Shown here: piece by piece, positions 541-63,813 of the stretch
Position numbering within the stretch: position 1 is the stretch's first letter
How the letters are laid out: every line of letters starts with the position of its first letter
Source of the DNA: Podarcis bocagei
Lineage: Eukaryota
DNA: 64,000 nucleotides
Reading direction: 5' to 3' (one strand)
Assembly (NCBI GenBank): GCA_964188305.1
Contig: OZ076888.1
The notes under the pieces: generated by a model
The model's database searches: none
What the model saw: only the letters and a program-made list of their open reading frames with translations
Told to the model about the DNA's origin: nothing
Program-made: the position numbers and the translations under genes

Positions 541-799
541 ATGAATCCATCCCTGGTGATTGTATCACTGATATGGCATGTTGTAGGACATGCAATTTTT
601 CTCAGAACCTGACATTAGTTAGAGAGTGGGAACAAGAGAAAGGCATCACTTTCTGCCATAGTCATCATAACAGAAGGAGCTTGGTCAGCTAAAGTGCTCT
701 ATCTCAAGGGTCATAATGATGGCAACCTTTATGTTCATGTTCCAAGCCAGGAAATTACAAACTACAACAACATCACTAGCTGGAATATAAGCTTTTCTC

Positions 800-1602
800 A
801 CAAGTCTGCTCGCCCTCCCCAGTGTGGCAGCGTTGTGGGCCAGCACTGGCTTCCCATATGCCTGAAGAAGAGGCTTAGGATGCTAGGATCCTGCCTGAAG
901 GGGGCAGAATGCCCCCCGCACCTATCAGGAGCTGGGTTCAAGCCTGTTTGTGTGATTGACCGATGGCAGGCAAGCTTAAATGCAGGTCTGGCCTTGGGGG
1001 CAGACCTGATGGAGCAGGTAGGCTTGCTTCAGGTTCGCTTCCAGGGAATTTAAGCACCCTGCACCTGGACCCAGCACCTGGGTGTCAGATCACTGGATCA
1101 TTCTTGCTGCTCGTCGGGTTTTGGATCTTCAGGGTCAGCATCAGCACGTCAGGTCAGGGTCTCCTGCTATTGCTGTGGGACATGGAGTGAACCTGCTCTG
1201 AAGCCCCAGCTGCGGTTCACTCTCTCTTCAGAGCTGAAATCATTGGTGCCAATGGTAGTGTCCCACAGCCTTGTCCTCAGCCTTGTTAGCAGCCCATCCC
1301 TTGTTCCAGCTAGCGGACACACTCAAGGGTTTGGAGGCTGTTCCCATGACATTGCAGGAAGCAGAGCTTGAGTACTAAGGGTGGTGCCATTTTGTAGCTC
1401 AGCTTTAAGCAAGTGCCATTTTGGAGCATTGGAAGGACAGTTTCCCAGATGGGGGCTGGGGCCTATAGCACTCTCCAAGGCAGCAATCACTGTGAGGGTG
1501 CCCCTATTTGATGTAAGTCTTAGGAACCCCTGCCGTTGGATTGGTCCCTGGCATCACTTCTGGCCGGCAGGCCGGAAGTTAATGGTTATTATGCCAAACC
1601 TC
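800..1602 (-). mobile_element. Possible degenerate DIRS/Ngaro-like (tyrosine-recombinase retroelement) 5' fragment
   Basis: GC-rich island. The minus strand starts GAGGTTTGGCATAATAACCATTAA and later gives a zinc-finger-like remnant (DRCGGHSAPF). No intact ORF. Confidence 0.25.
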
Positions 1603-3326
1603 TTTCATATGTACTCAATAAAGTTGTGTCCTAATTCAATCCAAAGTCAAGTGTGTAGTATCCTTATTCTATGCAATCAGTCTGGGTGGCCTGGACAAAG
1701 TCTCGGCATGGAAGTATCCTTAAAAGTTAAATTTCCAAATCACAAATCTAAGAATATTCAACATTTTTAAAAAAATCAATTCCCCCCCCCCTCTTCTTAT
1801 TTCAGTCCCACTTCTGGACATCTATGGCCATGAATCTTATTATGCATATTGACTCAGCAGGTTTTAGGACACCAGAATAACTCTGCATTAGAAAGGACAA
1901 CAATATATATGGCATCAGTTACCCATTGCCTTCAGTTATCTAACAGCATTGCATTTTTCTATTGCTTTATTTGGTCTGTATATATCAAAGCAAGTATAAA
2001 ATATTCACATTCAAGTGGACATGCATACGTACATGCAAAATGCTATACTCAAGCCCATGCGTTCACAAACACCTCTCATACAGGCATCTCTAACTGAACT
2101 CAGCTTCTGTCTGAATCTCCAAATGTCATAAATTAATGCTCTTCCAGTCAGAGAGACTTTCTCAATGGAGACAACAATGTCAATGAAATAAAATTAATAG
2201 CGCAAAATGCTAATAAAATGGATAAACCTTCTTTCTCCTCATAAAACCATATTAGCCCGACTCATATTTACTCTTCTTCTGTGCAGAAATTAGTGTGTTT
2301 CTTGAAGTTGATGGGAAACACTAACAGTAATGAAGCAGAAAAATGATGAATGTTAAAAAATTAAGGTGATCCATAAATGGTGATAAACTTGCCCCCATTT
2401 TGGTGGCCATGTACTTTTGATGAGCTGGCAAACTTTTAAGGCTCTTTAATTTAAGACAGAGTGGTTTTATTTCTTTCAAGCTACAGTGGAAATAATTTCC
2501 TTATCTATCATTTAGAATGGTTTAATACTTTCATTAATCCACACATCATAAAGCAGAAAGTGATTTTTATACCTATTCCAATCATTCATTGTGGCCGACT
2601 GCAAATGGGAAACGGCTGTTTTTCTGCTGATTCTGAATTTAAACTTAAGGACAGTATCTCTACAAGTCAGAGTAATTATGGAGGCAAAGATTTAAAGACA
2701 GATAGAACCACTGTCATCTCTCCCTTGCTGTTATTGGGCTTATTATTGGTTTGTAGGGAAAATAAATGAACAAATCACAGGAACATAACCCCAGAGAAGA
2801 GAACGGAGACCTGACATATGGATGGAAAGGAAGCGGCGCCTTGGAGGCAGTGCTATGGTAATGACTGATGTTCAATTTTACCAGCTAGGAATTCATAGTC
2901 TGCTCTTTTTAAAAATAAATAAATAAATAAATGCTCCCAACACACACATCACAAGTGGCCTATATTCCTGCCGACTCAGTATAAAATCCACCAAGTAATT
3001 TTATCGGCTAATTAGCAACACTGGGATTTAAGAAAGACAAAGACGACAGAGAAGATCGGTTGTTCAGCATTTTTGTTAATACAATCACTATTTAGTATAA
3101 AATATTGTAGCATTATACTAAAATGTATCATAATATTATTATAATAGTTTTAAATGGTTGCTTTTGGTAACTGATATTGTTTTTACATGTTCACATTCTG
3201 TATATTGATGCTTTATGTAAGCTTCTGTGTAATGCACCCTTGCTCGAACTGGTACACTCCAGATGTTTTGGACTATAATTCCTATCAGCCTCAGCCAGCA
3301 CAGTTGTGATGGGAATCGTGGTCCAA

Positions 3327-3622
3327 GGCCTCGTCTACACAGCTGCAAATAAAACAATTTAAATGTGTTGCAAAGCGCAATATACAAATGTGACACTAGA
3401 TGGTGGGTCTGGTGACTTCTGTTTCAGTGTATCTGAAGAAGTGTGCATGCACACGGAAGCTCATACCAATGACAAACTTAGTTGGTCTCTAAGGTGCTAC
3501 TGGAAGGAATTTTTAAATTTTGTTTAGATGGTGACAGTGAGCTATGCAAAATTCAATGTATTTTTCAAAACTTTTTTTTAAAGTGTTTTCACAGCGTTTT
3601 TTATATGTGTGTAGATTCCACC
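3327..3622. mobile_element. PIF/Harbinger-like MITE containing a Penelope-derived insert
   Basis: Ends GGCCTCGTCTACAC / GTGTAGATTCCACC with 3-bp CAA repeats at 3324-3326 and 3623-3625. A paralog lies at 4755-4930. Confidence 0.6.
3406..3524 (+). mobile_element. Penelope-like pLTR fragment with minimal hammerhead ribozyme motif
   Basis: GTAT-CTGAAGA-A-GTGTGC-AT-GCACAC-GGAA-GC-TC-ATAC at 3429-3466. 9-bp TSD TAGATGGTG at 3397-3405 and 3525-3533. Confidence 0.7.
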
Positions 3623-4754
3623 CAAAACACCAAGAAGGCATTGGGTTAAGCAAGGCTGGCTTAACGAATTTTCTCTAAAAGGCAGCTTTAAATATAGAAA
3701 TAAAAACATTCTTTGTTCTGCTGCAGTTCATTTGGAATCAGAACAGTCAAAAATAAATGGCTGCTTGTGATGGCTTGGTTCAAACAAGTGCTGATAACCC
3801 AGTGGATAATTTTCAGATCTGGGTTTCTCCCCTTGCAACCTCACTGGATAGGAAGATGTCCCGAGAGCCAGTTGGAAGATGGAGTAAATTCCTTGCCAAA
3901 AATTTATCCGGTCAATCTCCTCCAACAAATACCCATCAACCTCTTTTGCAACAGAGCAATGAAAGGATGTACATTTGGCTTTCAGTCATTAAAAGTGGCT
4001 TCCCCACCCAACATGTTCAGGAATAAGAAGAGAACTGAATCAAAATAAAGCATTATTTTTCCTGGAATGCACTGGAGGGCTTAACTGCTGTTAGAAATCG
4101 CTCATGAAAAATTCGCTTTTTTGTTTCACATGCTAATATTTAGAAAAACCTCTTTTAAAATCATAAACAGGAAATAAATTATTTAAGCTCATGCTAAACT
4201 GCTGCAAGCAATCCAAATAGAAACAATATCCATTTTAGGCAGCATGTCAACCAATTTAGCAAATTCATTCTGTATTGTTCGGTTGCTTAATACTTCATCT
4301 CAGGCTAAAAGCATCTCCCATAGTTATTCTCGCCTCTTACAACCTGTGGCTTTGCTTCAGTAAGCAAAGTAAATTTCTCAAAATAAAGCTGGGTCCTCCT
4401 TTGTGGATGAGATTCCCTAAATGCTGAGCATCCGCTTGATGAATTTATGTGTCTGTAACCTTCCCCAAGCTTTGTCTAGTGCCCTCCAGTCACATTCTTC
4501 AAATTATTGTAATGTATTTTTGTAGGGTGACATATGTACATAGAGCTCCTTCAAGTGAAGGAGGAATTCTGAACCACTCATGATCTCCTGTTTCATACAG
4601 AACCTCTATGTGCATATATTAGTTTATGTTTAGGTCTTGTACTCGTGTTTGCTGAACTAAGCCTAATGACTTCTTTGTGTTATTTTAATGTGTGGGTGAG
4701 TCTGCCTGAACCCCGTCTTGCATTTTGTCCCTTAACAGAAAGCACTTACCGGTA

Positions 4755-6020: not shown

Positions 6021-8119
6021 AGGAGACTACTAGAGCATGCTGAATTCCTTTAAAGAAACATCTTTCAGCACAGGCAGAGGTAACAATTGGGATGCAGCTG
6101 TTGCTACTATAGAAAGCTCAGTCTCAGTTGTTGTTGTTTTTGTTGCAGCTCTGTGGTTCTTGAGCATAGTCCGAGCCTTGCGCTGCTTTGCCTCAGGGCA
6201 GAACAGTGGGAGATGTTGCTAGTGGGATAAGGGCAATGCTCTGTAATTCTGCTCCATTTGCAATACTTTATCTCCTCACAGGCCCATTGTTGACTTGCTG
6301 CACAGCAAATAATATTAAGAGAGATACGAAGCAAAAGGTGACATTTTAAGAATGCCTAGAGCAAGCCTGCACTTTCCATGGGACCTTCATTTAACATGGC
6401 TCCGAAACACAAACAAGGTTTCTGGCCTCATCCAAACATAGACGATGAATGCATTCCATTTTAGAGCAATAGTGAAAGATCTGTAGGATGACATAAACCC
6501 CCAAACATCCAAATCTGGGAAGTGTGGGAACATGTGGTAGGCCCAAGTTTCCTGATCCTTGAATCCAACTAGTAGTCCAATCCTATGAAGATTTACTTAG
6601 AAAAAGAAATCTATTATGTTGAATGGTGATTACTTCAGGTGGCAAATGCAAATAGAATTGTAGAGTATGTGAACCCACCAGTAGCCACTATTATCTTTTC
6701 CAGTTACATTCCAAATTGGCCAACCCCCAAACCTGTAACTTAGCTATCTTCTTCAGAAACAATAATTAAGTGTTCCCAATGGCAATGAATTCTAATTGTT
6801 CCAAAATGAAGGCTAGAAGAGGTTGATGCCTCTGAAAACAATATGATCAGGAAGAGGAAATAATGGCCCACCCTTCCCATTTATCTGCCTGACACAACTG
6901 TCCTATATCATCTGTGGAATTATTATGACTCCCTTATTCCTAAATCTCCATCCAAGATGAAATCTCTTGTCGGGGAGCAGATTATCCTGACTACGCTCTT
7001 CTTTCCATGCTTGATTCATCATTGAAGCTGGGTTTAACCTCTGCACGTTGCTTAGGAGGCTGAGATGAATTTTCCTAAGCTTCCCATTTTAAAGCACTAA
7101 GAAGTAAAGCCTATTTAGAATGTAAAGCACAATCAATAATACATCTCATTTAGCTCAATGACCTGAGAGCATGTAACTATATAATGTGCATGTTGACGTG
7201 GTTCATGGCGCCAAGCAGTGTGCTTCCCGCTTGATAAAGCTGCTGATAATGTGGCCTTGAGATTAGAGGCCGGTCTGAGATGAAATGAGATTGATTTAAA
7301 GATACTTTTCATTGAACGGGGCAGTTTATGTGATATTTGCTAATGAACAAGGCCCTTGAGCGCCTGTTTAAATGGTGATTGCTTGTGGGACAGTCGATTC
7401 AAGTTTTACAAGAGATGCAGGATCACTCTGCAGTATGCTGTGCTTCCAGTTTCCTACTCCTGACCAAAGCAGGTGATATTCTTGGGTCAGTCATCACAGA
7501 TCTACTGGGAACCCTAGAATAAATAGGGACACTGCTCCCCATAGGTGTTCAGACTGACATGTCCAGGATTCAAATGTGTGTTTGTGAGTTTTCCAGGAAG
7601 TGTTGGTGTGTGTTTGTCCAGGAAAGGTGTGTTTGAGTATCAACAATTTTAAGGCTGATTTCCTCTTGAAATATGGCAACCTTAGGAATGGAGAATAATT
7701 TAATAAATCCCAAGGCATTGGAAACTGTGTCCAATCCTTCCTCCAAGTTTCCATCCTTTATCCCTCTTCCCAGTAACAAATGAGGAGAGCGAAAGGGGAA
7801 AATAGACAAGTCTCAAGCTAAGACGAGGGTTCTTCTATGTTATTCCTGCATTATTGATGTCAACTCTGGGAAATGTAGCTTTTAAATCTCCCCTTAATTT
7901 CCTTTTGTCTGTCCTGAATCTCTAGTCAGCAAGTTTCATTGGCTTGCCATGGGGTTCTAGTCATATGAGGGTGAAAAATGTATTTCTTTAACAGCTTGAT
8001 TCACACCATGCATAAACCTCAATCATGTCTCCGCCCTGCCGCCCCCGGCAACCTTCCTGCCCCCTAAACCGATTCTTTTAAACGCTTGAGGAAATGTCAG
8101 CTTGAACATTATAAAGTTA

Positions 8120-9096
8120 CCGTATTTTTCGCTCTATAACACGCATCTGACCATAACACGCATGTAGTTTTTAGAGGAGGAAAACGAGGAAAAAATATTC
8201 TAAATGAAACAGTGGATGTATGATTTTTATGGTTCATGCTGTGGCCACAGACATGTGATCTGACAGTGAGTTTGGGGTAGCCCAATGCAAAAATCCTGAG
8301 GATCCATGTGGATCCGTGCTTTGTAACCACGTTTTAAGTGGGGAGGGAAGGAAAAGAACTCAAGGGACAAGGAGCTTTTCCGCGGGGAGGAGGGAGGGAA
8401 AGAGCACTGTTGCTTTAAAGGTATACTTAAGGTATTTGCCCTGTGCCTCGGTTTTTTTTTCCATTTAACAGTTTGCAGCCTTTTCCTTCCGCTCCTTGTT
8501 TTGAGGCGGAATAGATTTGAGCAAGTGAGGAGGACTTGGAATCCAGGGGATTCGCCATAGAATGGAGCACAAAAAAGCGGTAGGGGCACTAGGACCCAGA
8601 CATTGCTCAAATCTATCCTGCCTGAAAACAAGCTGCTCCATCCCAGCCGATCAGCTGAGACGCGGGGGATTTGCGAAGTTTTCCCCTCTCCCTCATGCCC
8701 TCCCAGGCCCTTTTTTTTACTTCCTGGTTTTCACTGCGTGGCTCAGAGCTCGAGGTTGGTTTTATTTTGCTGCTGGTTGCTTAAATTTTATCTTTCCTGC
8801 CGTCTCTCTGCAGCCTCATTGCTCTGTTTAGAGAGCGCGCAGACCTTTCCCTCCTCCCGTGTAAGCGGCTGCTGCCGGCTTTGCTGCTATGGCTCTCCTT
8901 CCCTCCCTCCTTCCTGGCTCCAGGTCGCTTTAAAGAAAGCAAAGTGAGAGCCTCGTAGAGCGTGTAAGTGGCTCCCGCTTTGCCTGACTGACGGCAGCCA
9001 TGGCTCTGATCCGTGCATTCGCTCCTTAACACGCACAGGCATTTTCCCTTACTTTCTCGGAGCAAAAAAGTGCGTGTTTTGGAGCGAAATTTACGG
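8120..9096. mobile_element. Non-autonomous Tc1/mariner (CCGTA-ended, Tc2/pogo-like) element with GC-rich interior
   Basis: 26-bp TIRs CCGTATTTTTCGCTCTATAACACGCA versus reverse complement CCGTAAATTTCGCTCCAAAACACGCA (4 mismatches). TA at 8118-8119 and 9097-9098. Confidence 0.8.
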
Positions 9097-10743
9097 TACA
9101 TGCTCTCAGGTCTTTTCAAATCAAGAAGGCTGGGGTTTGCTTATCTCTAGTGCTTACTCTTCAGAACCTCGTATTTCCAGACAGCTCCTCAAACTTTTCA
9201 TATCTTTCAAAAACTTTTCTCCCAAAACCATACACCTGGATTATGGATTATAAAGCAATCCAGCGGGAGTTGACAATTTTGCACCAACAACTCTGCTCCT
9301 CTACTGAAATCTGAATCATGTCCCAGTTCAGTATCTGTTTCTGGGCTGGGAGGAAAGAACTGACTTTTTTACATTGTACATAAGGAAAGTAACTTCAGCT
9401 GTTGTTGTTGCTGTTTTAAAAAAATGGGTGGTAGCCTTTGCTACCTGTTGCTTGATTAATTTGAATCCTGTCTGTGTTTTTGACCTCCTATAGTAATCCA
9501 GTAACCCCAGCTTTGCAAAACAGAGTTTTAAGATAGAACTTTACTCTTCAGTCTTTATTTACCTACCTATCATAATGTGACCCCTCTGAGACCATTGGTG
9601 AAATTCTAAGCTTCTTAACTCAGCTCCTACTCAGCTCAGTGGGTTGACTTCTTAATATCCCTATTAAGTTGCAGTCTATTGACATCATCTGTCTGAGACA
9701 GTGCACATCACTGGGAAATATGTTGGGAATAAAACTAGATTTTTCATCATGGAATAGAAGTTACAATGTTTGCAAAGTCCTTTATGGAAGTAGGAGGGGG
9801 AAAACTTTCTTAATCACTTTCAAAGATAAAGTTAGAAATAGGAACTTTGAACAAAATCGGTTGCTATGCATTTTCCTAATATAATGAGATTTATGCAGGA
9901 ATAATATGACTGAATTAATTGTTGGGATATCAATTAATACTTCAGTAATGCTGTAATTACAAAGTGATGATAATTAAATAGTCCACAGAAGCTTTGTGTG
10001 CAGAGAAATAATAAAAAAAGATATATAATTGAATTTAAGAATGTGAAAATGTCTTTGAAGTGAAAGTTAATCAAAAGTGGCAACAGGGATCTTTTGGTAA
10101 ATCTTCCCATCATTACCTTTCAATGGAGTAAAAGATCAAAGAGATAGAATTCTATCTGACTGTCACTTCAGCAAAATGAGCTCCTTGTGTCATTCGAAAT
10201 GGCTACCTCGAAACAGCTACATGGGTCCTTTAGGGAAGTGAAACAAAAATACCATTAATTAGTCATGAATGTTGGTGAGGGCGACGACATGTTGAAGAGT
10301 TTGATGGGCGTACGAATGCTTGAGGAGGAGAATGTCACAAAAAGCACCACAACTACATGCAGATAAATGAAGTGAGCAGATGGAGTGATTTATAATTATG
10401 AAGCCTTTGATCTCTTTTTTGGGTGTTTGAACATGATGCAATGCAAAGGAAGACAGAAGCGCTGGTGGTCTACTCACAGTTTTGTAATTCCCAAAGTGAA
10501 ACTTTCAAGCTCCTAATGAAAGAACTTCTCACAGTGGGAGTCAGAAATATGTGAAAGTTTTGTGTTGGTCATTATGAAATGTACAGCAACCAGTAAGTAT
10601 GAGTTATTTGCTCTTTTCATCCTCCCCATTCATATTACATGATGCCCAAACCTACCTCTTTCTTGGTTCACATCACTCAAGTACAGGATTTTAAGAAACT
10701 GGATAAGTATTTTTCTACACATCCAAGACATTAAATAAATAAA

Positions 10744-10799
<56 letters not shown>

Positions 10800-10907
10800 T
10801 TATTTGTACCCCACCCATCTGACTGGGTAGCCCCAGTCACTCTGGGCAGCTTCCAGCACATATAAAAACATAGCAAAACATTAAACCTTAAAAAGCTTCC
10901 CTATACA

Positions 10908-12374
10908 CCAAATGAGGGGAAATCTGATTTCTTTAAAAAGCTGCATGAGACCTTGATGGACTATCTGGATTATAATGTGATTTTGATAGGAGACATGAAT
11001 GGAGTGGTATCTACACATATGGACAAGGCACAAAGACAGGTAGTCACTAAGGATGGTAGACTACCGAAAACTTTATTTGAGATGACAGACAACTTGGACT
11101 TAGTTGATATTTGGAGAACAAAGAACCCCATGGCTAAAGAAGGAACCTTCTTCTCTGAAGCCAATATGACATGGACAAGAATTGACCAAATATGGGTAAC
11201 TAGAGGAATGGCACCAAAGACAAGAAAAGTGGAAATCTGCCCAAAAACATGCTCCGACCATAATGCTGTTAAGATGGAAATGAAACTAATATCAACTGGC
11301 TCCTTTAGATGGAGGATGAATGACACCTTATTTAGAGATGAAGAAGTGCTTAAGAAGGCCCAAAAAACTTTGAAAGACTATTTTGAGATAAATATGAACA
11401 CCAATGTGGAAAAAAGAGTAATCTGGGACACAAGTAAAGCGGTTATGAGAGGGTTTCTGATACAACAGAATACATTAAAGAAGAGAATCCAAAATGAGAA
11501 GAAGGATAAAATTTTGGAAAAAATAAAGGAAAGTGAAAAAATATTGGAACAAGATGGAGATAGATTGAAATTGCAGAGTTTTGAAAAACTAAAAAACAAA
11601 GTGCGTGATTGGTTTCATTATTATCAGATAATGGAGGCATATAAATTGGACAAGAAAATTGGCTTCCAGGTGGAAAAATCAAAATTAGAAACAGAACTGT
11701 TAGAACCTAAAACTAAGACCTTGTCAAAGATGTATAACTTGCTGTTGAAATGGAATACTCAGGATGAAACGGTCAAATCTGCTATGATTAAATGGGCACA
11801 AGATGTTGGACATAACATTATGTTTGCTGACTGGGAACAGTTGTGGACCACAGGTATGAAATTTACGGCATGTAATGCCCTGAGAGAGAATATTATGAAA
11901 ATGATATACAGGTGGTACATAACCCCAGCCAAGCTTGCAAAAATCTACCATTTGCCCGATAACAAATGTTGGAAATGTAAAGAAACTGAAGGTACATTCT
12001 TTCACCTTTGGTGGACATGCCCAAGGATTAAGGCTTTCTGGGAGATGATTTATAATGAAATGAAAAGGGTATTTAAATATACCTTTCTGAAGAAACCAGA
12101 GGCCTTTCTCCTGGGCATAGTCGGCCAATCGGTGTTAAAGAAGGACAGAACTTTCTTTATGTATGCTACAACAGCAGCAAGAATACTTACTGCAAAGTAT
12201 TGGAAGACACAAGACTTACCCACTCTGGAAGAATGGCAGATGAAAGTGATGGACTACATGGAATTGGCGGAAATGACTGGCAGAATCCGAGACCAGGGAG
12301 AAGAGGCGGTGGAAGAAGATTGGAGGAAATTTAAAGACTATTTACAGAAATATTGCAAAATTAAGGAATGTTAG
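10908..12374 (+). pseudogene. L1 ORF2 remnant: partial APE endonuclease fused in frame to the C-terminal CCHC domain, no RT
   Basis: EN motifs GDMN, RIDQIW and SDHNAV, linker IWDTSKAVMRG, then CWKCKETEGTFFHLWWTC. No YADD/FADD motif. The frame is open throughout. Confidence 0.85.
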
Positions 12375-12696
12375 AATGATGTTGGATTGTAGTTAAGTGG
12401 TTTCTAGCTGTAATGGTTTAAAAGAATATGGAAAAATTGGATTTTTAATAGGTAAAAATTTAATGTTATAATATATTAAGATTAAAGATCAGGATAATAA
12501 GGAGGGAAAGGAATTGCTGAACTAATAAATTGAACTGGAATACAAAAAAGGGAGGTATGAGGAGGTCCGGGAAACAAGTAAATGAAAGATAAGTGATGTA
12601 AAGAGGGAATTATTTTTAACTGTTTTTTATTTCCTACTTTTTCTTTTTCATTATGTAATATTGTGAAAACTTTAATAAATATTTTTATATATAGAA
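10908..12696 (+). mobile_element. L1 LINE, 5'-truncated with internal deletion of the RT domain
   Basis: 18-bp TSD AAAAAGCTTCCCTATACA at 10890-10907 and 12697-12714, at a TT/AAAA target. AATAAA at 12674-12679 and a short A tail. Confidence 0.9.
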
Positions 12697-12997
12697 AAAA
12701 AGCTTCCCTATACAGGGCTGCCTTCAGATGTTTCCTAAATATTGTACAATTACTCGTCTCCTTAACATCTGATGGGAGGGCATTCCACAGGGTGGGTGCC
12801 ACTACCGAAAAGAACAACTCTATTCTGATGAACCCCCATCTATATTGGAACTAAAGAGAATTACAAGTGGCGCTCTTCTGAGAAATGTTGTCGGGTATGG
12901 TTTCTTTACCTCATGGTAGACTTACAAAAAGAAAAGCACACACCAATAAATCAGTTTTAGAAAGGGCCAAGATTAGATGCAGACACACAAAGCATTT

Positions 12998-18399: not shown

Positions 18400-18494
18400 T
18401 CAGGTCCCACCCCACTGAAAGAGGCCACTAATGCCCCAAACCCTTCAAATTAAGGATCAAACCCCTGGCTAAAGAGCAAAGTCTTTGCATGGAA

Positions 18495-19589
18495 CCAGGC
18501 ATGGCTCCCTGGAGAGAGATTGGATCCTTTCCAGATTTCAGGCCCCACCATGGATTGGAAACTGCCCTGGTCACACTGATCGATGATCTCCAGCAGGCTA
18601 GGGACAGAGGTGAAAGTTGTTTTCTTGTTCTGCTGGATCTCTCAGCATCATTTGATACCATCAATCACAGTATCTTTCTGGACCACCTAGGACGGTTGGG
18701 AGTTGGGGGCACTGTTTGCAGTGGTTCCACTCCTTCCTCCTGTGTCCAGAAGTGGTGTCAGGGAATGGGTGTTCGGGCCCCTAGGCGCTCACCTGTGGGG
18801 TGCCTCAGGGCTCTGTCCTCTCCCCCTCTATATGAAACCATGGCAGAGATTGTCAGGGAGTTTGGGCTGAGTGTTCCCCCATATGCAGAAGATACCCAGC
18901 TCTACCCCTAGTTTAAACTGGAACTGGTGAAGGCCCAGAGCATCCTGTGTGGGTGTCTAGAGGCAGTTGGAGGATGGGTGGCAGTCCATGGATTGAGGTT
19001 GAATCCCAACAAGACAGAAGTATTGTTTCTTGGGGACAGGGTGTGGGGACTCCCTGGTTCTGAATGGGGGTAACAGTGCCCCTTAAGGACCAGGTGCACA
19101 GCCTTGTGGTCATTTTGGACTCACGGCTATCCATCAAAGCATAGGTCGACTCTGTGTCCAGGGTGGCTGTCTGCCAGCTCCATCTGATATTCTGGCTGCG
19201 ACCTGCCTGCACACTGCCTCACCAGAGTGGTACAGTGGTACCTCAGTTTTCAAACATAATCCGTTCCAGAAGTCCGTTCGGGTTCCGAAACGTTTGGAGA
19301 CCAAAAACTGAAAGCAGACGCCTCAAAATGGAAGCCCCAATATGGAAAACTCAAAACGGAAGCTGTGTTTCCTGTTCGACTTCCAAGGCGCATTTGAAAA
19401 CAAAGGCATTTACTTCTGGGTTTTCAGCGTTTGAGTTCCGAAACATTTGACTACGGAGGCATTCGAAAACTGAGGTACCACTGTACATTCTCTGGTTATC
19501 TCCCACTTGGACTACTGCAATGCACACTGCATGGGGCTACCTTTGAAGGTAACTCAGAAACTACAACTAATTCAGAGTGTAACAGCTAG
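18495..19589 (+). mobile_element. Older degenerate L2 RT fragment (same family as the 31.5-41 kb copies)
   Basis: FRPHHGLETALVTLIDDL...LDLSASFDTINH with frameshifts. Interrupted by a MITE. Confidence 0.85.
19233..19483. mobile_element. Tigger/pogo-like MITE
   Basis: TIRs CAGTGGTACCTCAGTTTTC / GAAAACTGAGGTACCACTG with TA TSD. Confidence 0.85.
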
Positions 19590-31487: not shown

Positions 31488-34235
31488 CTGGCATGTGTAA
31501 CAGAGACTTGGTTGGATGAAGCAGATGGGCCTGTCCTTGCCGCTGCTTGTCCACCAGGTTTCTCTTACGCACAGCAACCCAGGTCACGTGGGCGGGGAGG
31601 GGGGGTTGCAGTGATTTTTAGGAAGTCATTAGTTTGCACCAGGCGTCCTATTGGGAAGACCCAGTTTTCTGAGTGCATGTTCTGGAAGCTGGGCAATAGG
31701 GGCAGTACAGGATTCCTTTTGGTGTACCGACCTCCCCGCTGCACCAAGGATTCCCTGCCCGAGCTGCTTCAGGTCGTGGCGGATGTTCTCCTGGAGACAC
31801 CTAGCCTGGTCGTCCTAGGGGATTTTAACATCCATGCCGACACGACCTTACAAGGGGCCGCTCGGGACTTCGTGGAAAGCATGGCCTCCATGGGGCTGTC
31901 CCTGAATAAGTCTGGCCCAACCCATAGCCGTGGACATGCCTTGGACCTGGTGTTTACCTCTATGGATGTTGGTGATCTGACACTAAGTAAAAGCGAAATG
32001 AAAGAAGTGCCATGGTCAGATCACTTCCTGGTGCAACTGGACTTCTCTGCGACCCATCCCCTCTGCAGGGAGGTGGGACCAATTCGGATGGTCCGCCCCC
32101 GCCACTTAATGGATCCAAATGGTTTCCAGAGAGTGGTAGGGGATGCTTTATCCCATGTTGATGGCCTTTCAGCCGATTCCCTGGTGGCCCGCTGGAATGT
32201 GGAGTTAACCAGGGCTATTGACTGTTTGGCTCCGAAGCGCCCTCTCCGATTGCATGGAGCCCGGACAGCCCCATGGTTTTCCACGGATCTGAGGGCAATG
32301 AAACAATCGTTGAGACGGCTAGAGCGCCGGTGGCGGATAACTCATTCCGAATCTGACCGGACACAGGTTAGAGCTCAACGTCGAGCCTACCAAGTGGCGA
32401 TAGCGACGGCGAAGAAGAATTTCTTCACCGCCTCTATTGCATCTGCAGAAAACAGCAGCAGGAGACTTTTTCAGGTGGTTCACAATTTAGCGGAACCACC
32501 TGCAACATCGGGGCCCAGTACGGGCCACATGTTCTCCTGCAATGATTTTGCAAAGTTTTTTGCAGATAAAATCGCCCAGATTCGGGAAGAAGTAGACTCC
32601 ACCGTGGGAGCAGGGCCGGGGCGGGAGAGTGCTAGAGTTCTGTCTAGTCAAGCTGAGTGGGATCAATTTCAATCTGTTACCTCCGAGGATGTGGACAGGC
32701 TGCTTGGACGAGTGAAACCAACCACCTGTCTCCTGGATCCTTGCCCATCCTGGCTTATAAAAGCTAGCCGGGAAGGACTGGGCGATGGGCTTCGTGGGGT
32801 GGTGAATGCTTCCCTCCGTGAGGGAGCCTTCCCAGACCCGCTGAAAGAGGCGGTTATTAAACCGCTTCTTAAAAAACCATCTTTAGATGCGGCCACGATG
32901 GCCAACTATCGCCCAGTCTCAAATCTTCCATTCCTGGGCAAGGTGATTGAGCGAGTGGTTGCTGAACAACTCCAGGCACGCCTGGAAGAAGCGGACCATT
33001 TGGATCCCTTCCAATCGGGATTCAGGCCTCATCATGGGACTGAAACTGCCTTGGTCGCACTGGTTGATGATCTCCGGCGGGCTAGGGACAAGGGTGAGAG
33101 CTGTTTCCTAGTTCTGCTGGATCTCTCAGCGGCGTTTGATACCATCGACCATAGCATCCTTCTGGACCGTCTTGAGGGGCTGGGAGCTGGGGGCACTGTT
33201 ATACAGTGGTTCCGCTCCTTCCTCCTGGGCCGTGTTCAGAAAGTGGTGGTGGGGGATGAGTGTTCAGACCCTTGGGCCCTCACTTGTGGGGTGCCTCAGG
33301 GTTCTGTCCTCTCCCCCATGCTTTTTAACATCTATATGAAGCCGCTGGGAGAGATCATCAGGAGGTTTGGGCTGGGTGTTCATCAGTATGCGGATGACAC
33401 CCAGCTCTACCTCTCTTTTAAATCAGAACCAGTGAAGGCGGTGAAGGTCCTGTGTGAGTGTCTGGAGGCGGTTGGAGGATGGATGGCGGCTAACAGATTG
33501 AGGTTGAATCCTGACAAGACAGAAGTACTGTTTTTGGGGGACAGGAGGCGGGCAGGTGTGGAGGATTCCCTGGTCCTGAATGGGGTAACTGTGCCCCTGA
33601 AGGACCAGGTGCGCAGCCTGGGAGTCATTTTGGACTCACAGCTGTCCATGGAGGCACAGGTCAAATCTGTGTCCAGGGCAGCTGTTTACCAGCTCCATCT
33701 GGTACGTAGGCTGAGACCCTATCTGCCTGCGGACTGTCTCGCCAGAGTGGTGCATGCTCTGGTTATCTCCCGCTTGGACTACTGCAATGCGCTCTACGTG
33801 GGGCTACCTTTGAAGGTGACGCGGAAACTACAACTAATCCAGAATGCGGCAGCTAGACTGGTGACTGGGAGCGGCCGCCGAGACCATATAACACCGGTCT
33901 TGAAAGACCTGCATTGGCTCCCAGTACGTTTCCGAGCACAATTCAAAGTGTTGGTGCTGACCTTTAAAGCCCTAAACGGCCTCGGTCCAGTATACCTGAA
34001 GGAGCGTCTCCACCCCCATCAGTCTGCCCGGACGCTGAAGTCCAGCGCCGAGGGCCTTCTGGCGGTTCCCTCACTGCGAGAAGCAAAGCTACAGGGAACC
34101 AGGCAGAGGGCCTTCTCGGTAGTGGCGCCCGCCCTGTGGAACGCCCTTCCAGCAGATGTCAAAGCGATAAACAACTATCTGACATTCAGGAGACATCTTA
34201 AGGCAGCCCTGTTCAGGGAAGTTTTTAACGTGTGA
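31488..34235 (+). CDS. L2 ORF2 (APE endonuclease + reverse transcriptase), uninterrupted but lacking its N-terminus
   Basis: EN motifs ETW, YRPP, GDFN, LDLVF and SDH. RT motifs NYRPVSNLPFLGK, QSGFR, LDLSAAFDTIDH, GVPQGSVLSP and YADD. Confidence 0.88.
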   Translation: MACVTETWLDEADGPVLAAACPPGFSYAQQPRSRGRGGGVAVIFRKSLVCTRRPIGKTQFSECMFWKLGNRGSTGFLLVYRPPRCTKDSLPELLQVVADVLLETPSLVVLGDFNIHADTTLQGAARDFVESMASMGLSLNKSGPTHSRGHALDLVFTSMDVGDLTLSKSEMKEVPWSDHFLVQLDFSATHPLCREVGPIRMVRPRHLMDPNGFQRVVGDALSHVDGLSADSLVARWNVELTRAIDCLAPKRPLRLHGARTAPWFSTDLRAMKQSLRRLERRWRITHSESDRTQVRAQRRAYQVAIATAKKNFFTASIASAENSSRRLFQVVHNLAEPPATSGPSTGHMFSCNDFAKFFADKIAQIREEVDSTVGAGPGRESARVLSSQAEWDQFQSVTSEDVDRLLGRVKPTTCLLDPCPSWLIKASREGLGDGLRGVVNASLREGAFPDPLKEAVIKPLLKKPSLDAATMANYRPVSNLPFLGKVIERVVAEQLQARLEEADHLDPFQSGFRPHHGTETALVALVDDLRRARDKGESCFLVLLDLSAAFDTIDHSILLDRLEGLGAGGTVIQWFRSFLLGRVQKVVVGDECSDPWALTCGVPQGSVLSPMLFNIYMKPLGEIIRRFGLGVHQYADDTQLYLSFKSEPVKAVKVLCECLEAVGGWMAANRLRLNPDKTEVLFLGDRRRAGVEDSLVLNGVTVPLKDQVRSLGVILDSQLSMEAQVKSVSRAAVYQLHLVRRLRPYLPADCLARVVHALVISRLDYCNALYVGLPLKVTRKLQLIQNAAARLVTGSGRRDHITPVLKDLHWLPVRFRAQFKVLVLTFKALNGLGPVYLKERLHPHQSARTLKSSAEGLLAVPSLREAKLQGTRQRAFSVVAPALWNALPADVKAINNYLTFRRHLKAALFREVFNV

Positions 34236-38080: not shown

Positions 38081-39482
38081 TCAAAACTTCCATTCCTGGG
38101 CAAGGTGATTGAGCAAGCGGTTGCCGAACAACTCCAGGCACGCCGGGAAGAAGCGGACCATTTGGATCCCTTCCAGTCGGGATTCAGGCCTCATCATGGG
38201 ACTGAAACTGCCTTGGTCGCACTGGTTGATGATCTCCGGCGGGCTAGGGACAAAGGTGAGAGCTGTTTCCTAGTTCTGCTGGATCTCTCAGTGGCGTTTT
38301 GATACCATCGACCATAGCATCCTTCTGGACCGTCTTGAGGGGCTGGGAGCTGGGGGCACTGTTATACAGTGGTTCCGCTCCTTCCTCCTGGGCCGTGTTC
38401 AGAAAGTAGTGGTGGGGGATGAGTGTTCAGACCCCTGGGCTCTCACTTGTGGGGTGCCTCAGGGTTCTGTCCTCTCCCCCGTGCTTTTCAACATTTACAT
38501 GCAGCCGCTGGGAGAGATCATCAGGAGGTTTGGGCTGGGTGTTCATCAGTATGCGGATGATACCCAGCTCTACCTCTCTTTTAAATCAGAACCAGTGAAG
38601 GCGGTGAAGGTCCTGTGTGAGTGTCTGGAGGCGGTTGGAGGATGGATGGCGGCTAACAGATTGAGGTTGAATCCTGACAAGACAGAAGTACTGTTTTTGG
38701 GGGACAGGAGGCGGGCAGGTGTGGAGGATTCCCTGGTCCTGAATGGGGTAACTGTGCCCCTGAAGGACCAGGTGCGCAGCCTGGGAGTCATTTTGGACTC
38801 ACAGCTGTCCATGGAGGCACAGGTCAAATCTGTGTCCAGGGCAGCTGTTTACCAGCTCCATCTGGTACGTAGGCTGAGACCCTATCTGCCTGCGGACTGT
38901 CTCGCCAGAGTGGTGCATGCTCTGGTTATCTCCCGCTTGGACTACTGCAATGCGCTCTACGTGGGGCTACCTTTGAAGGTGACTCGGAAACTACAACTAA
39001 TCCAGAATGCGGCAGCTAGACTGGTGACTGGGAGCGGCTGCCGAGACCATATAACACCGGTCTTGAAAGACCTACATTGGCTTCCAGTACGTTTCCGAGC
39101 ACAATTCAAAGTGTTGGTGCTGACCTTTAAAGCCCTAAACGGCCTCGGTCCAGTATACCTGAAGGAGCGTCTCCACCCCCATCATTCTGCCCGGACGCTG
39201 AAGTCCAGCGCCGAGGGCCTTCTGGCGGTTCCCTCATTGCGAGAAGCAAAGCTACAGGGAACCAGGCAGAGGGCCTTCTCGGTAGTGGCGCCCGCCCTGT
39301 GGAACGCCCTTCCAGCAGATGTCAAAGCGATAAACAACTACCTGACATTCAGAAGACATCTTAAGGCAGCCCTGTTCAGGGAAGTTTTTAACGTGTGATA
39401 TTTTACTGTATTTCTGTTTTCTATGGAAGCCGCCCAGAGTGGCTGGGGAGGCCCAGCCAGATGGGCGGGGTATAAATAATAA

Positions 39483-39604: not shown

Positions 39605-41443
39605 ATTCCCACTTGGGAAGGCAGGTGAACTAACGTCAGGCCTCATCATGGGACTGAAACTGCCTTGGTCGCACTGGTTGATGATCTCCGGCGGGCTAGG
39701 GACAAAGGTGAGAGCTGTTTCCTAGTTCTGCTGGATCTCTCAGCGGCGTTCGATACCATCGACCATAGCATCCTTCTGGACCGTCTTGAGGGGCTGGGAG
39801 CTGGGGGCACTGTCATACAGTGGTTCCGCTCCTTCCTCCTGGGCCGTGTTCAGAAAGTGGTGGGGGGGGATGAGTGTTCAGACCCCTGGGCTCTCACTTG
39901 TGGGGTGCCTCAGGGTTCTGTCCTCTCCCCCATGCTTTTCAACATCTACATGCGGCCGCTGGGAGAGATCATCAGGAGGTTTGGGCTGGGTGTTCATCAG
40001 TATGCGGATGATACCCAGCTCTACCTCTCTTTTAAATCAGAACCAGTGAAGGCGGTGAAGGTCCTGTGTGAGTGTCTGGAGGCGGTTGGAGGATGGATGG
40101 CGGCTAACAGATTGAGGTTGAATCCTGACAAGACAGAAGTACTGTTTTTGGGGGACAGGAGGCGGGCAGGTGTGGAGGATTCCCTGGTCCTGAATGGGGT
40201 AACTGTGCCCCTGAAGGACCAGGTGCGCAGCCTGGGAGTCATTTTGGACTCACAGCTGTCCATTGAGGCGCAGGTCAAATCTGTGTCCAGGGCAGCTGTT
40301 TACCAGCTCCATCTGGTACGTAGGCTGAGACCCTATCTGCCTGCGGACTGTCTCGCCAGAGTGGTGCATGCTCTGGTTATCTCCCACTTGGACTACTGCA
40401 ATGCACTCTACGTGGGGCTACCTTTGAAGGTGACTCGGAAACTACAACTAATCCAGAATGCGGCAGCTAGACTGGTGACTGGGAGCGGCCGCCGAGACCA
40501 TATAACACCGGTCTTGAAAGACCTGCATTGGCTCCCAGTACGTTTCCGAGCACAATTCAAAGTGTTGGTGCTGACCTTTAAAGCCCTAAACGGCCTCGGT
40601 CCAGTATACCTGAAGGAGCGTCTCCACCCCCATCATTCTGCCCGGACGCTGAGGTCCAGCGCCGAGGGCCTTCTGGCGGTTCCCTCATTATGAGAAGCAA
40701 AGCTACAGGGAACCAGGCAGAGGGCCTTCTCGGTAGTGGCGCCCGCCCTGTGGAACGCCCTTCCAGCAGATGTCAAAGTGATAAACAACTATCTGACATT
40801 CAGGAGACATCTTAAGGCAGCCCTGTTCAGGGAAGTTTTTAACGTGTGATATTTTATTGTATTTTTGGTTTTTATGGAAGCCGCCCAGAGTGGCTGGGGA
40901 GGCCCAGCCAGATGGGCGGGGTATAAATAATAAATTATTATTATTATTATTATTATTACTGGAAGAAGTGAAGATCACCAGTTTTCAAGCAATGATTCTT
41001 CAACATCAACTTTGTTGGACTGGTCATATTGTTCGGATGCCTGATTATCGTTTTCCAAAGCAACTGCTCTATTCCCAGCTTAAGAATGGAAAGCAGAATG
41101 CCAGTGGACAACAAAAAAGGTTTAAAGACACTCTCAAGGCAAATCTTTAAAAATGCAGTATAAGCACAGATAATTGGAAAACACTGGCCTTGTGAGCTCC
41201 AATTGGAGAATAGCCTCTACTAAAGTACTTTGAAGAAGGACAAAGGGGAGAAACGAGCTAAGAGGAAGGCAAGTGTGGCAAATCCTCAGCATGATCAACT
41301 CCTGCTCGGAAACCTATGTCTCCACTGTGGAAGGATGTGTGGATCCAGAATTGGCCTCCACAGTCACTTACGGACACAGCTTTAAGACCATGTTCATTTA
41401 GGACAATCTTACTCAGCTAAGAGTGCTGGCCAAAGAAGAAGAA
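39605..41443 (+). mobile_element. RTE-clade LINE 3' fragment split by an L2
   Basis: TWEGR*TNVS (39611-39639) continues as LEEVKITSFQAMILQHQLCWTGHIVRMPDYRFPKQLLY from 40959. Terminal CLHCGR motif and (GAA)n tail at 41434-41443. Confidence 0.75.
39636..40958 (+). mobile_element. Young 5'-truncated L2
   Basis: Near-identical to the other copies, with a premature TGA at 40691-40693 (CGA>TGA) and a (TTA)n tail. Confidence 0.92.
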
Positions 41444-51730: not shown

Positions 51731-51868
51731 NNNNNNNNNNNNNNNNNNNNNNNNNNNNNNNNNNNNNNNNNNNNNNNNNNNNNNNNNNNNNNNNNNNNNN
51801 NNNNNNNNNNNNNNNNNNNNNNNNNNNNNNNNNNNNNNNNNNNNNNNNNNNNNNNNNNNNNNNNNNNN
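51731..51868. other. Assembly gap (138 N)
   Basis: N run. The left flank is the start of an L2-type 3' stem-loop and the right flank is an LTR. Confidence 1.
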
Positions 51869-63685: not shown

Positions 63686-63813
63686 ATAGAACCATAAAGT
63701 TGGAAGGGGCCATCTAGTCCAACCCCCTGCAATGCAGGAATCTTTTGCCCAACATGGGGCTCAAACCAACAACCCTGAGATTGATAGCCTCATGCTCTAC
63801 CAACTGAGCTATC
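63686..63813 (-). mobile_element. Short tRNA(Lys)-derived SINE with CR1-like tail
   Basis: The minus strand reads GATAGCTCAGTTGGTAGAGCATGAG...GGTTTGAGCCCCATGTTGGGC, then ggttggactagatg...ccaactttatggttctat. Confidence 0.75.

What the first reader, a model, noticed from the sequence alone, without database searches (positions are those of the whole stretch)
10890..12714. Young L1 with the whole RT deleted in frame: EN fused to the zinc-knuckle domain
Seen: a stop-free frame of ~1.47 kb runs from EN motifs through ESEK|ILEQ (~11540) directly into the CCHC C-terminus, and the insert has a perfect 18-bp TSD at TT/AAAA. Known: L1 ORF2 is ~1270 aa with the RT between these parts, so roughly 2 kb is missing (estimate). 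Inference: either a one-off template jump or deletion in the A-rich junction, or a copy of an RT-less non-autonomous L1 subfamily mobilised in trans. This copy also lacks the EN N-terminal catalytic residues, so it cannot itself make an active nuclease. A random deletion is in frame one time in three.
Basis: partly seen in the sequence, partly recalled or inferred. Interest (0 to 1): 0.7.

Follow-up and report, generated by a model that had tools for sequence, protein, structure and literature searches.

The report
Dead lizard L1 copy missing its RT
This is a recent, 5'-cut and therefore dead copy of a wall-lizard LINE-1 jumping gene that lost the 1.94-kb stretch encoding its copying enzyme in one short-homology jump or deletion; I found no sign that this form spreads, so it is an ordinary defective copy.

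Summary
Window 10908-12696 (+) is a 5'-truncated L1 flanked by an exact 18-nt target-site duplication at a TT/AAAAA site. It carries a 488-codon open frame. That frame matches ORF2 residues about 110-322 (second half of the endonuclease plus linker) joined directly to residues about 969-1248 (end of the wrist plus the CCHC C-terminal domain). About 648 codons (1.94 kb) are absent, including the whole RVT_1 domain.

Podarcis lilfordi L1 copies place the joint at 11539-11546. There the two parental sites share an imperfect 8-nt A-rich microhomology, AAA(G/T)(A/T)TTG. There are no GT..AG ends, so splicing is unlikely.

No second copy of this joint turned up in protein databases, earlier notes on this genome, or a metagenome scan. 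Read depth beside the joint caps any such family at about 25 copies in the one genome sampled.

The closest relative found is also RT-deleted, but at different breakpoints and out of frame. Such deletions therefore recur independently, and the open frame here is probably a one-in-three accident.

Most likely this is a one-off template switch during reverse transcription, or a later genomic deletion. Interest is low.

The parts
10890..10907 (.). 5' copy of the target-site duplication (aaaaagcttccctataca), preceded by TT, which is an L1 endonuclease-type TT/AAAA site
   Evidence: Read directly; identical to 12697-12714.
10908..12696 (+). The whole L1 insert (1789 nt): 5'-truncated inside the endonuclease and internally deleted
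   Evidence: blastn and tblastn to P. lilfordi L1 copies L001-L004; phmmer to human ORF2p structures.
10908..11541 (+). Left part: ORF2 residues about 110-322, i.e. the C-terminal half of the APE-type endonuclease (GDMN, RID and SDH motifs) plus the A-rich linker. The N-terminal catalytic residues are absent.
   Evidence: It is 92% identical in DNA to L003 6416-7005.
11522..11527 (+). Internal AATAAA hexamer 12 nt upstream of the joint; also present in the left-parent copies
   Evidence: Read. It bears only on the variant model of a jump onto a prematurely polyadenylated L1 RNA.
11539..11546 (+). Deletion joint (AAATATTG). The left parent reads AAAGATTG and the right parent reads AAATTTTG, a 6/8 microhomology. 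The crossover lies somewhere in these 8 nt.
   Evidence: Ungapped three-way comparison with L003 copy B (left) and L003 A/B, L001, L004, L002 (right); protein breakpoints.
11541..12371 (+). Right part: ORF2 residues about 969-1248, i.e. the end of the wrist plus the C-terminal domain
   Evidence: It is 88-91% identical in DNA to L001 and L003.
11967..12020 (+). CCHC zinc knuckle (C-x2-C-x8-H-x4-C; codons 354, 357, 366, 371)
   Evidence: Invariant columns C354, C357, H366 and C371 in alignment A1; aligned to the human ORF2p CTD.
12372..12374 (+). ORF2 stop codon (TAG)
12375..12696 (+). 3' UTR with AATAAA at 12674-12679 and a very short A tail (2 A's beyond the TSD, up to 7 if the TSD's A's are counted)
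   Evidence: homology to L001 runs to element position 1778 of 1789.
12697..12714 (.). 3' copy of the target-site duplication
10762..10889 (-). Left flank: part of a very high-copy repeat, the 3' tail of a non-L1 LINE or its SINE, into which the L1 inserted in antisense orientation
   Evidence: Read depth of about 600-880 per strand at roughly 1.3x sampling. The minus-strand ORF 12482-12817 ends like the LINE ORF at 31512-34235.
12715..12867 (-). Right flank: continuation of the same high-copy repeat
   Evidence: Depth of 1100-4300 per strand.

Best explanation
An L1 RNA of an active Podarcis lineage was reverse-transcribed at a TT/AAAAA nick. After copying the 3' UTR and the last ~278 codons of ORF2, the enzyme (or the nascent cDNA end) left the template at ...GGGAAATTTTGG... 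It re-annealed about 1.94 kb upstream at the look-alike A-rich site ...GAAAAAAGATTG... in the linker after the endonuclease. It then copied another ~630 nt and stopped, leaving a 5' truncation at ORF2 codon ~110.

The result is a dead-on-arrival copy. It has no promoter, no ORF1, no RT and only half an endonuclease. Its two ORF2 remnants happen to be in the same frame, a one-in-three chance.

Shown here: the anatomy, the breakpoints, the microhomology, the lack of splice ends, and the absence of other copies in the data that could be searched. Inferred: that the loss happened during reverse transcription of this very copy.
For: Single event: one exact 18-nt TSD encloses both halves, and no poly(A) separates them.

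Breakpoints: left homology ends and right homology starts within 2-3 codons of each other. At the DNA level the two parental sites share AAAnnTTG in register.

Recurrence of the same type of event in this lineage: the closest relative found, L003 copy A in P. lilfordi (91-92% identical), joins ORF2 aa 63-301 to aa 785-1240. Its joint is another A-rich microhomology 45 nt upstream of ours, and it is out of frame. In the same locus, the poly(A) end of copy A abuts the 5'-truncated copy B, whose first base corresponds to window 11490. Both copies sit inside one perfect 39-nt direct repeat. This is the signature of an end-to-end template jump.

No spread seen:
- None of 34 Podarcis-type proteins covers both halves; the maximum is 57%.
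- A 140-aa query centred on the joint found nothing.
- An exact 30-mer scan of metagenome contigs found nothing.
- No note in 716 windows of this genome describes an EN-CTD L1.
- Depth at 11519 is 33 reads at about 1.26x sampling, most of them with a non-window base, so there are at most ~25 joint-bearing copies in that genome.

Young copy of a selected lineage: open frame, and dN/dS of 0.06-0.18 against relatives.

From established knowledge: internal deletions and template switches are recognised categories of L1 insertion structure (PMC2912911; my recollection of Gilbert et al. 2005 and Symer et al. 2002, not re-read here).
Against: Nothing separates a template switch during reverse transcription from a later genomic deletion by microhomology-mediated end joining or replication slippage. 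Both leave the same joint.

Neither parent proxy reproduces the joint exactly. There is one mismatch either way, at 11542 or 11543, because the true source sublineage was not sampled; the best proxies are 91-92% identical.

The search for further copies could not reach complete lizard genomes. The read tables were truncated and did not show rows at the joint.
Confidence: 0.45

Rival explanations
1. Post-insertion genomic deletion. A 3.7-kb 5'-truncated L1 inserted normally and later lost 1.94 kb by microhomology-mediated end joining or replication slippage between the two A-rich look-alike sites.
For: The same joint anatomy is expected: 6/8 microhomology and no filler. The TSD and both halves are otherwise intact.
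Against: The copy looks very young, with an open 488-codon frame and an exact TSD, which leaves little time for a second event. The same L1 lineage shows other RT-type jump signatures in L003. Neither point is decisive.
Confidence: 0.28
2. Inherited deletion. The source element already lacked the RT, and this is one 5'-truncated copy of a small non-autonomous L1 lineage mobilised in trans by intact L1s.
For: Earlier unchecked notes of this scan say this genome holds abundant RT-less HAL1-like L1 dependants, so trans-mobilisation would be efficient here. A few reads carry the window's minority alleles near the joint, for example 5 of 33 at 11519, which allows a handful of sister copies. The in-frame joint would be compatible with a translated ORF2 remnant.
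Against: No second copy of the joint was found in any searchable data. Read depth caps a family at about 25 copies in the sampled genome, and most of that depth is expected from ordinary left-parent copies. The nearest relative's RT deletion has other breakpoints, so deletions arise independently. L1 cis-preference (established knowledge) disfavours RT-less L1 RNAs.
Confidence: 0.2
3. Spliced L1 RNA (SpIRE-like). The RT segment was removed as an intron from the L1 transcript before retrotransposition.
For: An RNA-level loss would also give one TSD around both halves.
Against: In every parental proxy, the removed segment in the register that reproduces the window begins GA.. or AG.. and ends ..AA or ..TG, not GT..AG. 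The nearby GT at 11533 is retained in the window.
Confidence: 0.03
4. Assembly artefact. The RT segment was collapsed out of the assembly.
For: Not tested directly. The one raw-read run gave zero depth on the unique left flank, and no listed record bridges the joint.
Against: The two sides share only 6 of 8 bases, far too little for a repeat collapse. The joint keeps the frame open, and the TSD is exact.
Confidence: 0.02

Closest known systems
5'-truncated, internally deleted or rearranged L1 insertions of mammals (cell-culture assays and human/chimpanzee-specific insertions; category listed in PMC2912911; Gilbert et al. 2005 and Symer et al. 2002 from memory)
   Same: TPRT hallmarks: TSD, TT/AAAA site, AATAAA plus A tail, and 5' truncation. 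An internal segment is missing at a short-homology joint. The copy is dead on arrival.
   Different: This is a lizard L1 lineage, with a very short A tail. The loss is large (1.94 kb), removes exactly the polymerase part, and happens to keep the frame.
L1 template-switch chimeras (U6/L1 and mRNA/L1 chimeric retrocopies; end-to-end template jumping of non-LTR RTs; from memory: Buzdin et al. 2002, Bibillo & Eickbush 2002)
   Same: The proposed mechanism is the same: the RT leaves one template position and resumes elsewhere, helped by a few matching bases. The L003 A+B composite within one 39-nt repeat looks like such a chimera.
   Different: Here the jump would be within L1 RNA (same or sister molecule), from one internal site to another, not onto the 3' end of another RNA.
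HAL1 / half-L1 non-autonomous L1 derivatives (mammals; HAL1-like families noted in this genome by earlier notes)
   Same: An L1-derived sequence without reverse transcriptase.
   Different: HAL1-type elements keep a 5' UTR and an ORF1-like gene, lack ORF2, and are multi-copy. This copy has no 5' end and no ORF1, keeps two ORF2 pieces, and is known from one locus.
SpIREs (spliced integrated retrotransposed L1 elements; Larson et al. 2018, from memory)
   Same: An internal piece of L1 is missing within a single TSD.
   Different: SpIRE joints are GT..AG splice sites in the 5' UTR or ORF1. This joint has no splice ends and lies in ORF2.

Membership tests
LINE-1 (L1 clade non-LTR retrotransposon), defective copy | APE-type endonuclease domain at the start of ORF2 | tested here: met
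   Only the C-terminal half is present. phmmer to human L1 EN structures gives E 1.6e-16 for codons 1-126. Pfam Exo_endo_phos hits are below the cutoff because the domain is cut.
LINE-1 (L1 clade non-LTR retrotransposon), defective copy | Reverse transcriptase domain (RVT_1) in ORF2 | tested here: not met
   There is no RVT_1 hit. ORF2 residues about 323-968 are absent, and these include RVT_1 511-765 of P0181. The copy is therefore an L1 by descent, not a functional L1.
LINE-1 (L1 clade non-LTR retrotransposon), defective copy | C-terminal domain with a CCHC motif | tested here: met
   C354, C357, H366 and C371 are present. The region aligns to human ORF2p 1049-1234 and these residues are invariant in A1.
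LINE-1 (L1 clade non-LTR retrotransposon), defective copy | TPRT insertion hallmarks: TSD, TT/AAAA target, poly(A) signal and A tail | tested here: met
   Exact 18-nt TSD, TT before AAAAA, AATAAA at 12674-12679, and a short A run.
LINE-1 (L1 clade non-LTR retrotransposon), defective copy | Close sequence relatives that are complete L1 ORF2 genes | tested here: met
   80-93% aa identity to Podarcis muralis and P. lilfordi ORF2 fragments. About 50% identity to a full-length 1253-aa P. muralis ORF2 on both sides of the gap.
Propagating non-autonomous (RT-less) L1 subfamily | Several loci with the same internal joint but different flanks and TSDs | tested here: inconclusive
   None was found in protein databases, earlier notes or the metagenome scan. 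Read depth allows at most ~25 copies. Complete lizard genomes could not be searched.
Propagating non-autonomous (RT-less) L1 subfamily | Full-length members with a 5' UTR/promoter and ORF1 | tested here: not met
   This copy begins inside the endonuclease at ORF2 codon ~110. No other member is known.
SpIRE (spliced L1 retrocopy) | GT..AG at the ends of the missing segment in the source sequence | tested here: not met
   Parental proxies show GA/AG..AA/TG in the register that reproduces the window.

The most novel reading that the evidence does not exclude
The A-rich linker-coding stretch just after the endonuclease (window 11486-11546) may be a recurrent template-switch site in this Podarcis L1 lineage. 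It may repeatedly generate RT-less L1 RNAs, and one or more of these, including this in-frame EN-CTD form, may be mobilised in trans as a small non-autonomous lineage alongside the genome's HAL1-like families. Three independent breakpoints fall within these 60 nt: our joint, the joint of L003 copy A, and the 5' end of L003 copy B where it is fused to a poly(A) tail.
Probability: 0.12. Interest if true: 0.45.

Novelty: new member of a known kind. Interest (0 to 1): 0.15.

Why it matters
As it stands it matters little. It is one more defective L1 copy. Its open frame has no promoter, no ORF1 and an incomplete nuclease, so no function is expected.

It is a clean natural example, outside mammals, of a large microhomology-guided internal loss inside a single L1 insertion event. 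Together with the P. lilfordi locus L003, it hints that the A-rich linker after the endonuclease is a preferred switching site.

If whole-genome searches showed many copies of the joint, it would document how non-autonomous L1 derivatives are born in a genome that already supports several RT-less L1 dependants.

Tried and rejected
1. Seven database proteins (P0036-40, P0043, P0044; UniParc-only, 457-728 aa) align to the query in one piece across the joint at 30-37% identity, which at first looked like an old RT-less family. I rejected this reading. They are closest to Anolis ORF2 (up to 59%). Five of them carry ORF1 fused in front of a partial endonuclease. One keeps a 41-aa RT piece. Their left ends (aa 263-479) and right starts (aa 987-1114) all differ, and five stop at the same residue. 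They are most likely patchwork gene models on L1 copies.

2. Read laying was meant to count reads across the joint. The tables were dominated by the high-copy flank repeat and showed no row at the joint. Depth in the left half varies 25-146 regardless of the joint, so the dip in bin 11491-11571 is not evidence. Only the upper bound of ~25 copies was kept.

3. A second L1 copy in the window: none.

4. Word search with a 140-aa joint-centred piece: nothing.

5. Exact joint 30-mer in JGI metagenome contigs: nothing, as expected.

6. A model of two separate insertions was rejected: one TSD encloses both halves and no poly(A) separates them.

7. A jump onto a prematurely polyadenylated L1 RNA (AATAAA at 11522-11527) was considered. 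The A run at the joint is no longer than in the left parent, 6 A's, so the model is not needed, though it is not excluded.

Only natural copies were compared.

Full report
WHAT IS THERE. Window 10908-12696 (+) is an L1 fragment bounded by an exact 18-nt direct repeat, aaaaagcttccctataca, at 10890-10907 and 12697-12714. The repeat is preceded by TT, so the target is the classic TT/AAAA(A) endonuclease site. The insert ends with AATAAA (12674-12679), 15 more bases and a very short A run. The A's of the repeat could belong to the tail, in which case the duplication is 13 nt.

The host sequence on both sides is a very high-copy repeat. Its depth is 600-4300 reads per strand in a run sampled at about 1.3x. 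Thousands of its paralogues read straight through the duplicated site once (table 7, place 12698), so the empty site is reconstructed. The minus-strand reading of the right flank ends like the 907-aa LINE ORF at 31512-34235. The L1 therefore landed antisense in the 3' tail of a non-L1 LINE, or of a SINE derived from it.

THE FRAME AND ITS TWO HALVES. From 10908 to the TAG at 12372-12374 there are 488 codons without a stop.
- Pfam sees only a sub-threshold C-terminal piece of the APE endonuclease and no RVT_1.
- phmmer against solved structures aligns codons 1-233 to human ORF2p 116-347 (E 3e-29) and codons 272-460 to ORF2p 1049-1234 (E 4e-11).
- The word search returned 34 relatives, nearly all from Podarcis muralis and P. 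lilfordi, at up to 93% identity. This agrees with earlier notes that the genome is a wall lizard.
- blastp shows that every left-type relative stops matching at codon 213, and every right-type relative starts at codon 211-212.
- Against a full-length P. muralis ORF2 of another lineage (P0181, 1253 aa; EN 8-229, RVT_1 511-765), the retained parts are about aa 110-322 and 969-1240.
- About 647-648 codons are missing. Two P. lilfordi copies give 1942 nt, and each has its own frameshifts.
- The missing part comprises the rest of the tower, the fingers, palm and thumb, and most of the wrist.
- The copy keeps the GDxN, RID and SDH endonuclease motifs and the CCHC knuckle (codons 354-371). It starts after the positions of human N14 and E43.

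THE JOINT. DNA of five natural P. lilfordi L1 copies was fetched (L001-L004) and compared without building any consensus.
- The best left proxy (L003 copy B) reads ...GTGAAAAAAGATTGAGAACAAATCC.
- The right proxies read ...GGGAAATTTTGGAACAAGATGG.
- The window reads GTGAAAAAATATTGGAACAAGATGG.

In the register that reproduces the window, the two parental sites agree at AAAnnTTG (window 11539-11546; 6 of 8). The crossover lies somewhere in these 8 bases. One base (11542 or 11543) mismatches whichever side is chosen. This is expected, because the true source sublineage was not sampled; the best proxies are 91-92% identical. The removed segment does not begin with GT or end with AG in any proxy, and the nearby GT at 11533 is retained. 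Splicing is therefore unlikely.

IS IT A FAMILY? I found no second copy of the joint.
- None of the 34 relatives covers both halves; the maximum is 57%.
- A 140-aa query centred on the joint found nothing.
- An exact 30-mer scan of metagenome contigs found nothing.
- Notes on 716 windows of this genome mention several HAL1-like RT-less families, but no EN-CTD L1.
- The single read-laying run did not list rows at the joint. Depth in the left half varies from 25 to 146 irrespective of the joint. The usable result is a bound: 33 reads cover 11519 at about 1.26x sampling, and 28 of them carry a non-window base. Joint-bearing copies at 90% identity or more therefore number at most about 25 in that genome, and probably far fewer.

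These are limited searches.

A FALSE LEAD. The exhaustive representative search gave seven proteins that align in one piece across the joint at 30-37% identity. They are UniParc-only entries, closest to Anolis ORF2. Five carry ORF1 fused in front of a partial endonuclease, one retains a 41-aa RT piece, all have different boundaries, and five end at the same residue. I read them as patchwork gene models on L1 copies, not as an RT-less family.

A REAL LEAD. The closest relative of the window's element is copy A in L003 (P. lilfordi, 6278-8847; 92% identical on the left, 91% on the right). It is also RT-deleted, but differently.
- ORF2 aa 63-301 is joined to aa 785-1240.
- The joint is an A-rich microhomology of about 13 nt, at the equivalent of window 11486-11498.
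- The joint is out of frame.
- Its poly(A) end abuts copy B, a 5'-truncated L1 whose first base corresponds to window 11490.
- The pair sits inside one perfect 39-nt direct repeat, 6239-6277 and 12108-12146. This looks like an end-to-end template jump within one insertion event.

Three independent breakpoints therefore fall within 60 nt of the A-rich linker-coding stretch. With n=3 this is only a hint of a switching hot spot. It does show that RT-removing jumps arise repeatedly and independently, and that an in-frame outcome is not the rule.

AGE. The exact TSD and the open frame point to a recent insertion from an active lineage. So does the fact that differences from relatives are overwhelmingly synonymous: dN/dS is 0.06-0.18 in both halves, and dS is 0.2-0.36 to the nearest sampled copies. 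The low dN/dS reflects selection on autonomous masters, not on the fusion.

MECHANISM AND ODDS. I estimate the alternatives as follows.
- 0.45: a microhomology-guided template switch during the reverse transcription that made this copy.
- 0.28: a later genomic deletion between the same look-alike sites. The joint itself cannot distinguish this from the first.
- 0.20: the deletion was inherited from an RT-less source.
- 0.03: splicing.
- 0.02: assembly error.

A variant, a jump onto a prematurely polyadenylated L1 RNA using the AATAAA at 11522-11527, is not needed, because the A run at the joint is no longer than in the parent.

Whichever route applies, the copy lacks a promoter, ORF1, the RT and half the nuclease. 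It is not expected to do anything.

COMPARISON AND VERDICT. The anatomy matches the known class of 5'-truncated, internally deleted L1 insertions (category listed in PMC2912911). In tumours, internal deletions are mostly tied to twin priming (bioRxiv 10.1101/2024.08.27.596794), which does not apply here because there is no inversion. It is not a HAL1-type element and not a SpIRE. It is a new instance of a known kind, and interest is low. The only upside is the untested possibility of a switching hot spot or a small RT-less lineage.

Noticed in passing
L003:6239-12146 (Podarcis lilfordi, OX395133.1): Two L1 pieces lie head to tail inside one perfect 39-nt direct repeat (6239-6277 and 12108-12146). 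Copy A (6278-8847) has ORF2 aa 63-301 joined to aa 785-1240 and ends in a poly(A). Copy B (8848-12107) follows directly and is 5'-truncated at ORF2 aa ~310. It looks like a single insertion made by an end-to-end template jump, and copy A carries its own RT deletion.
   Followed up: partly
window 31512-34235 (+); also 38409-39398, 39665-40693, 18489-18911: There is an intact 907-aa ORF of a non-L1 LINE with endonuclease plus RT (YADD). Two further long partial copies lie nearby. Its C-terminal residues (..FSVVAPALWNALP..KAALFREVF) match the very high-copy repeat that flanks the L1 insert, so that repeat is this LINE's tail or a SINE built on it.
   Followed up: no
window 10748-10802: An (ATT)n microsatellite of about 18 units lies just upstream of the host repeat. 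Reads and contigs break there.
   Followed up: no
window 51731-51868: A run of 138 N (assembly gap or masked stretch).
   Followed up: no
proteins P0036-P0040, P0043, P0044 (UniParc UPI0001F9....): Seven Anolis-like database proteins join ORF1, a partial L1 endonuclease and the ORF2 C-terminal domain without the RT. Their boundaries differ. They are probably gene-model artefacts on L1 copies that could mislead homology-based annotation.
   Followed up: partly
window 63754-63811 (-): A borderline Rfam tRNA match (31.1 bits against a gathering score of 29). It is probably the tRNA-derived head of a SINE.
   Followed up: no
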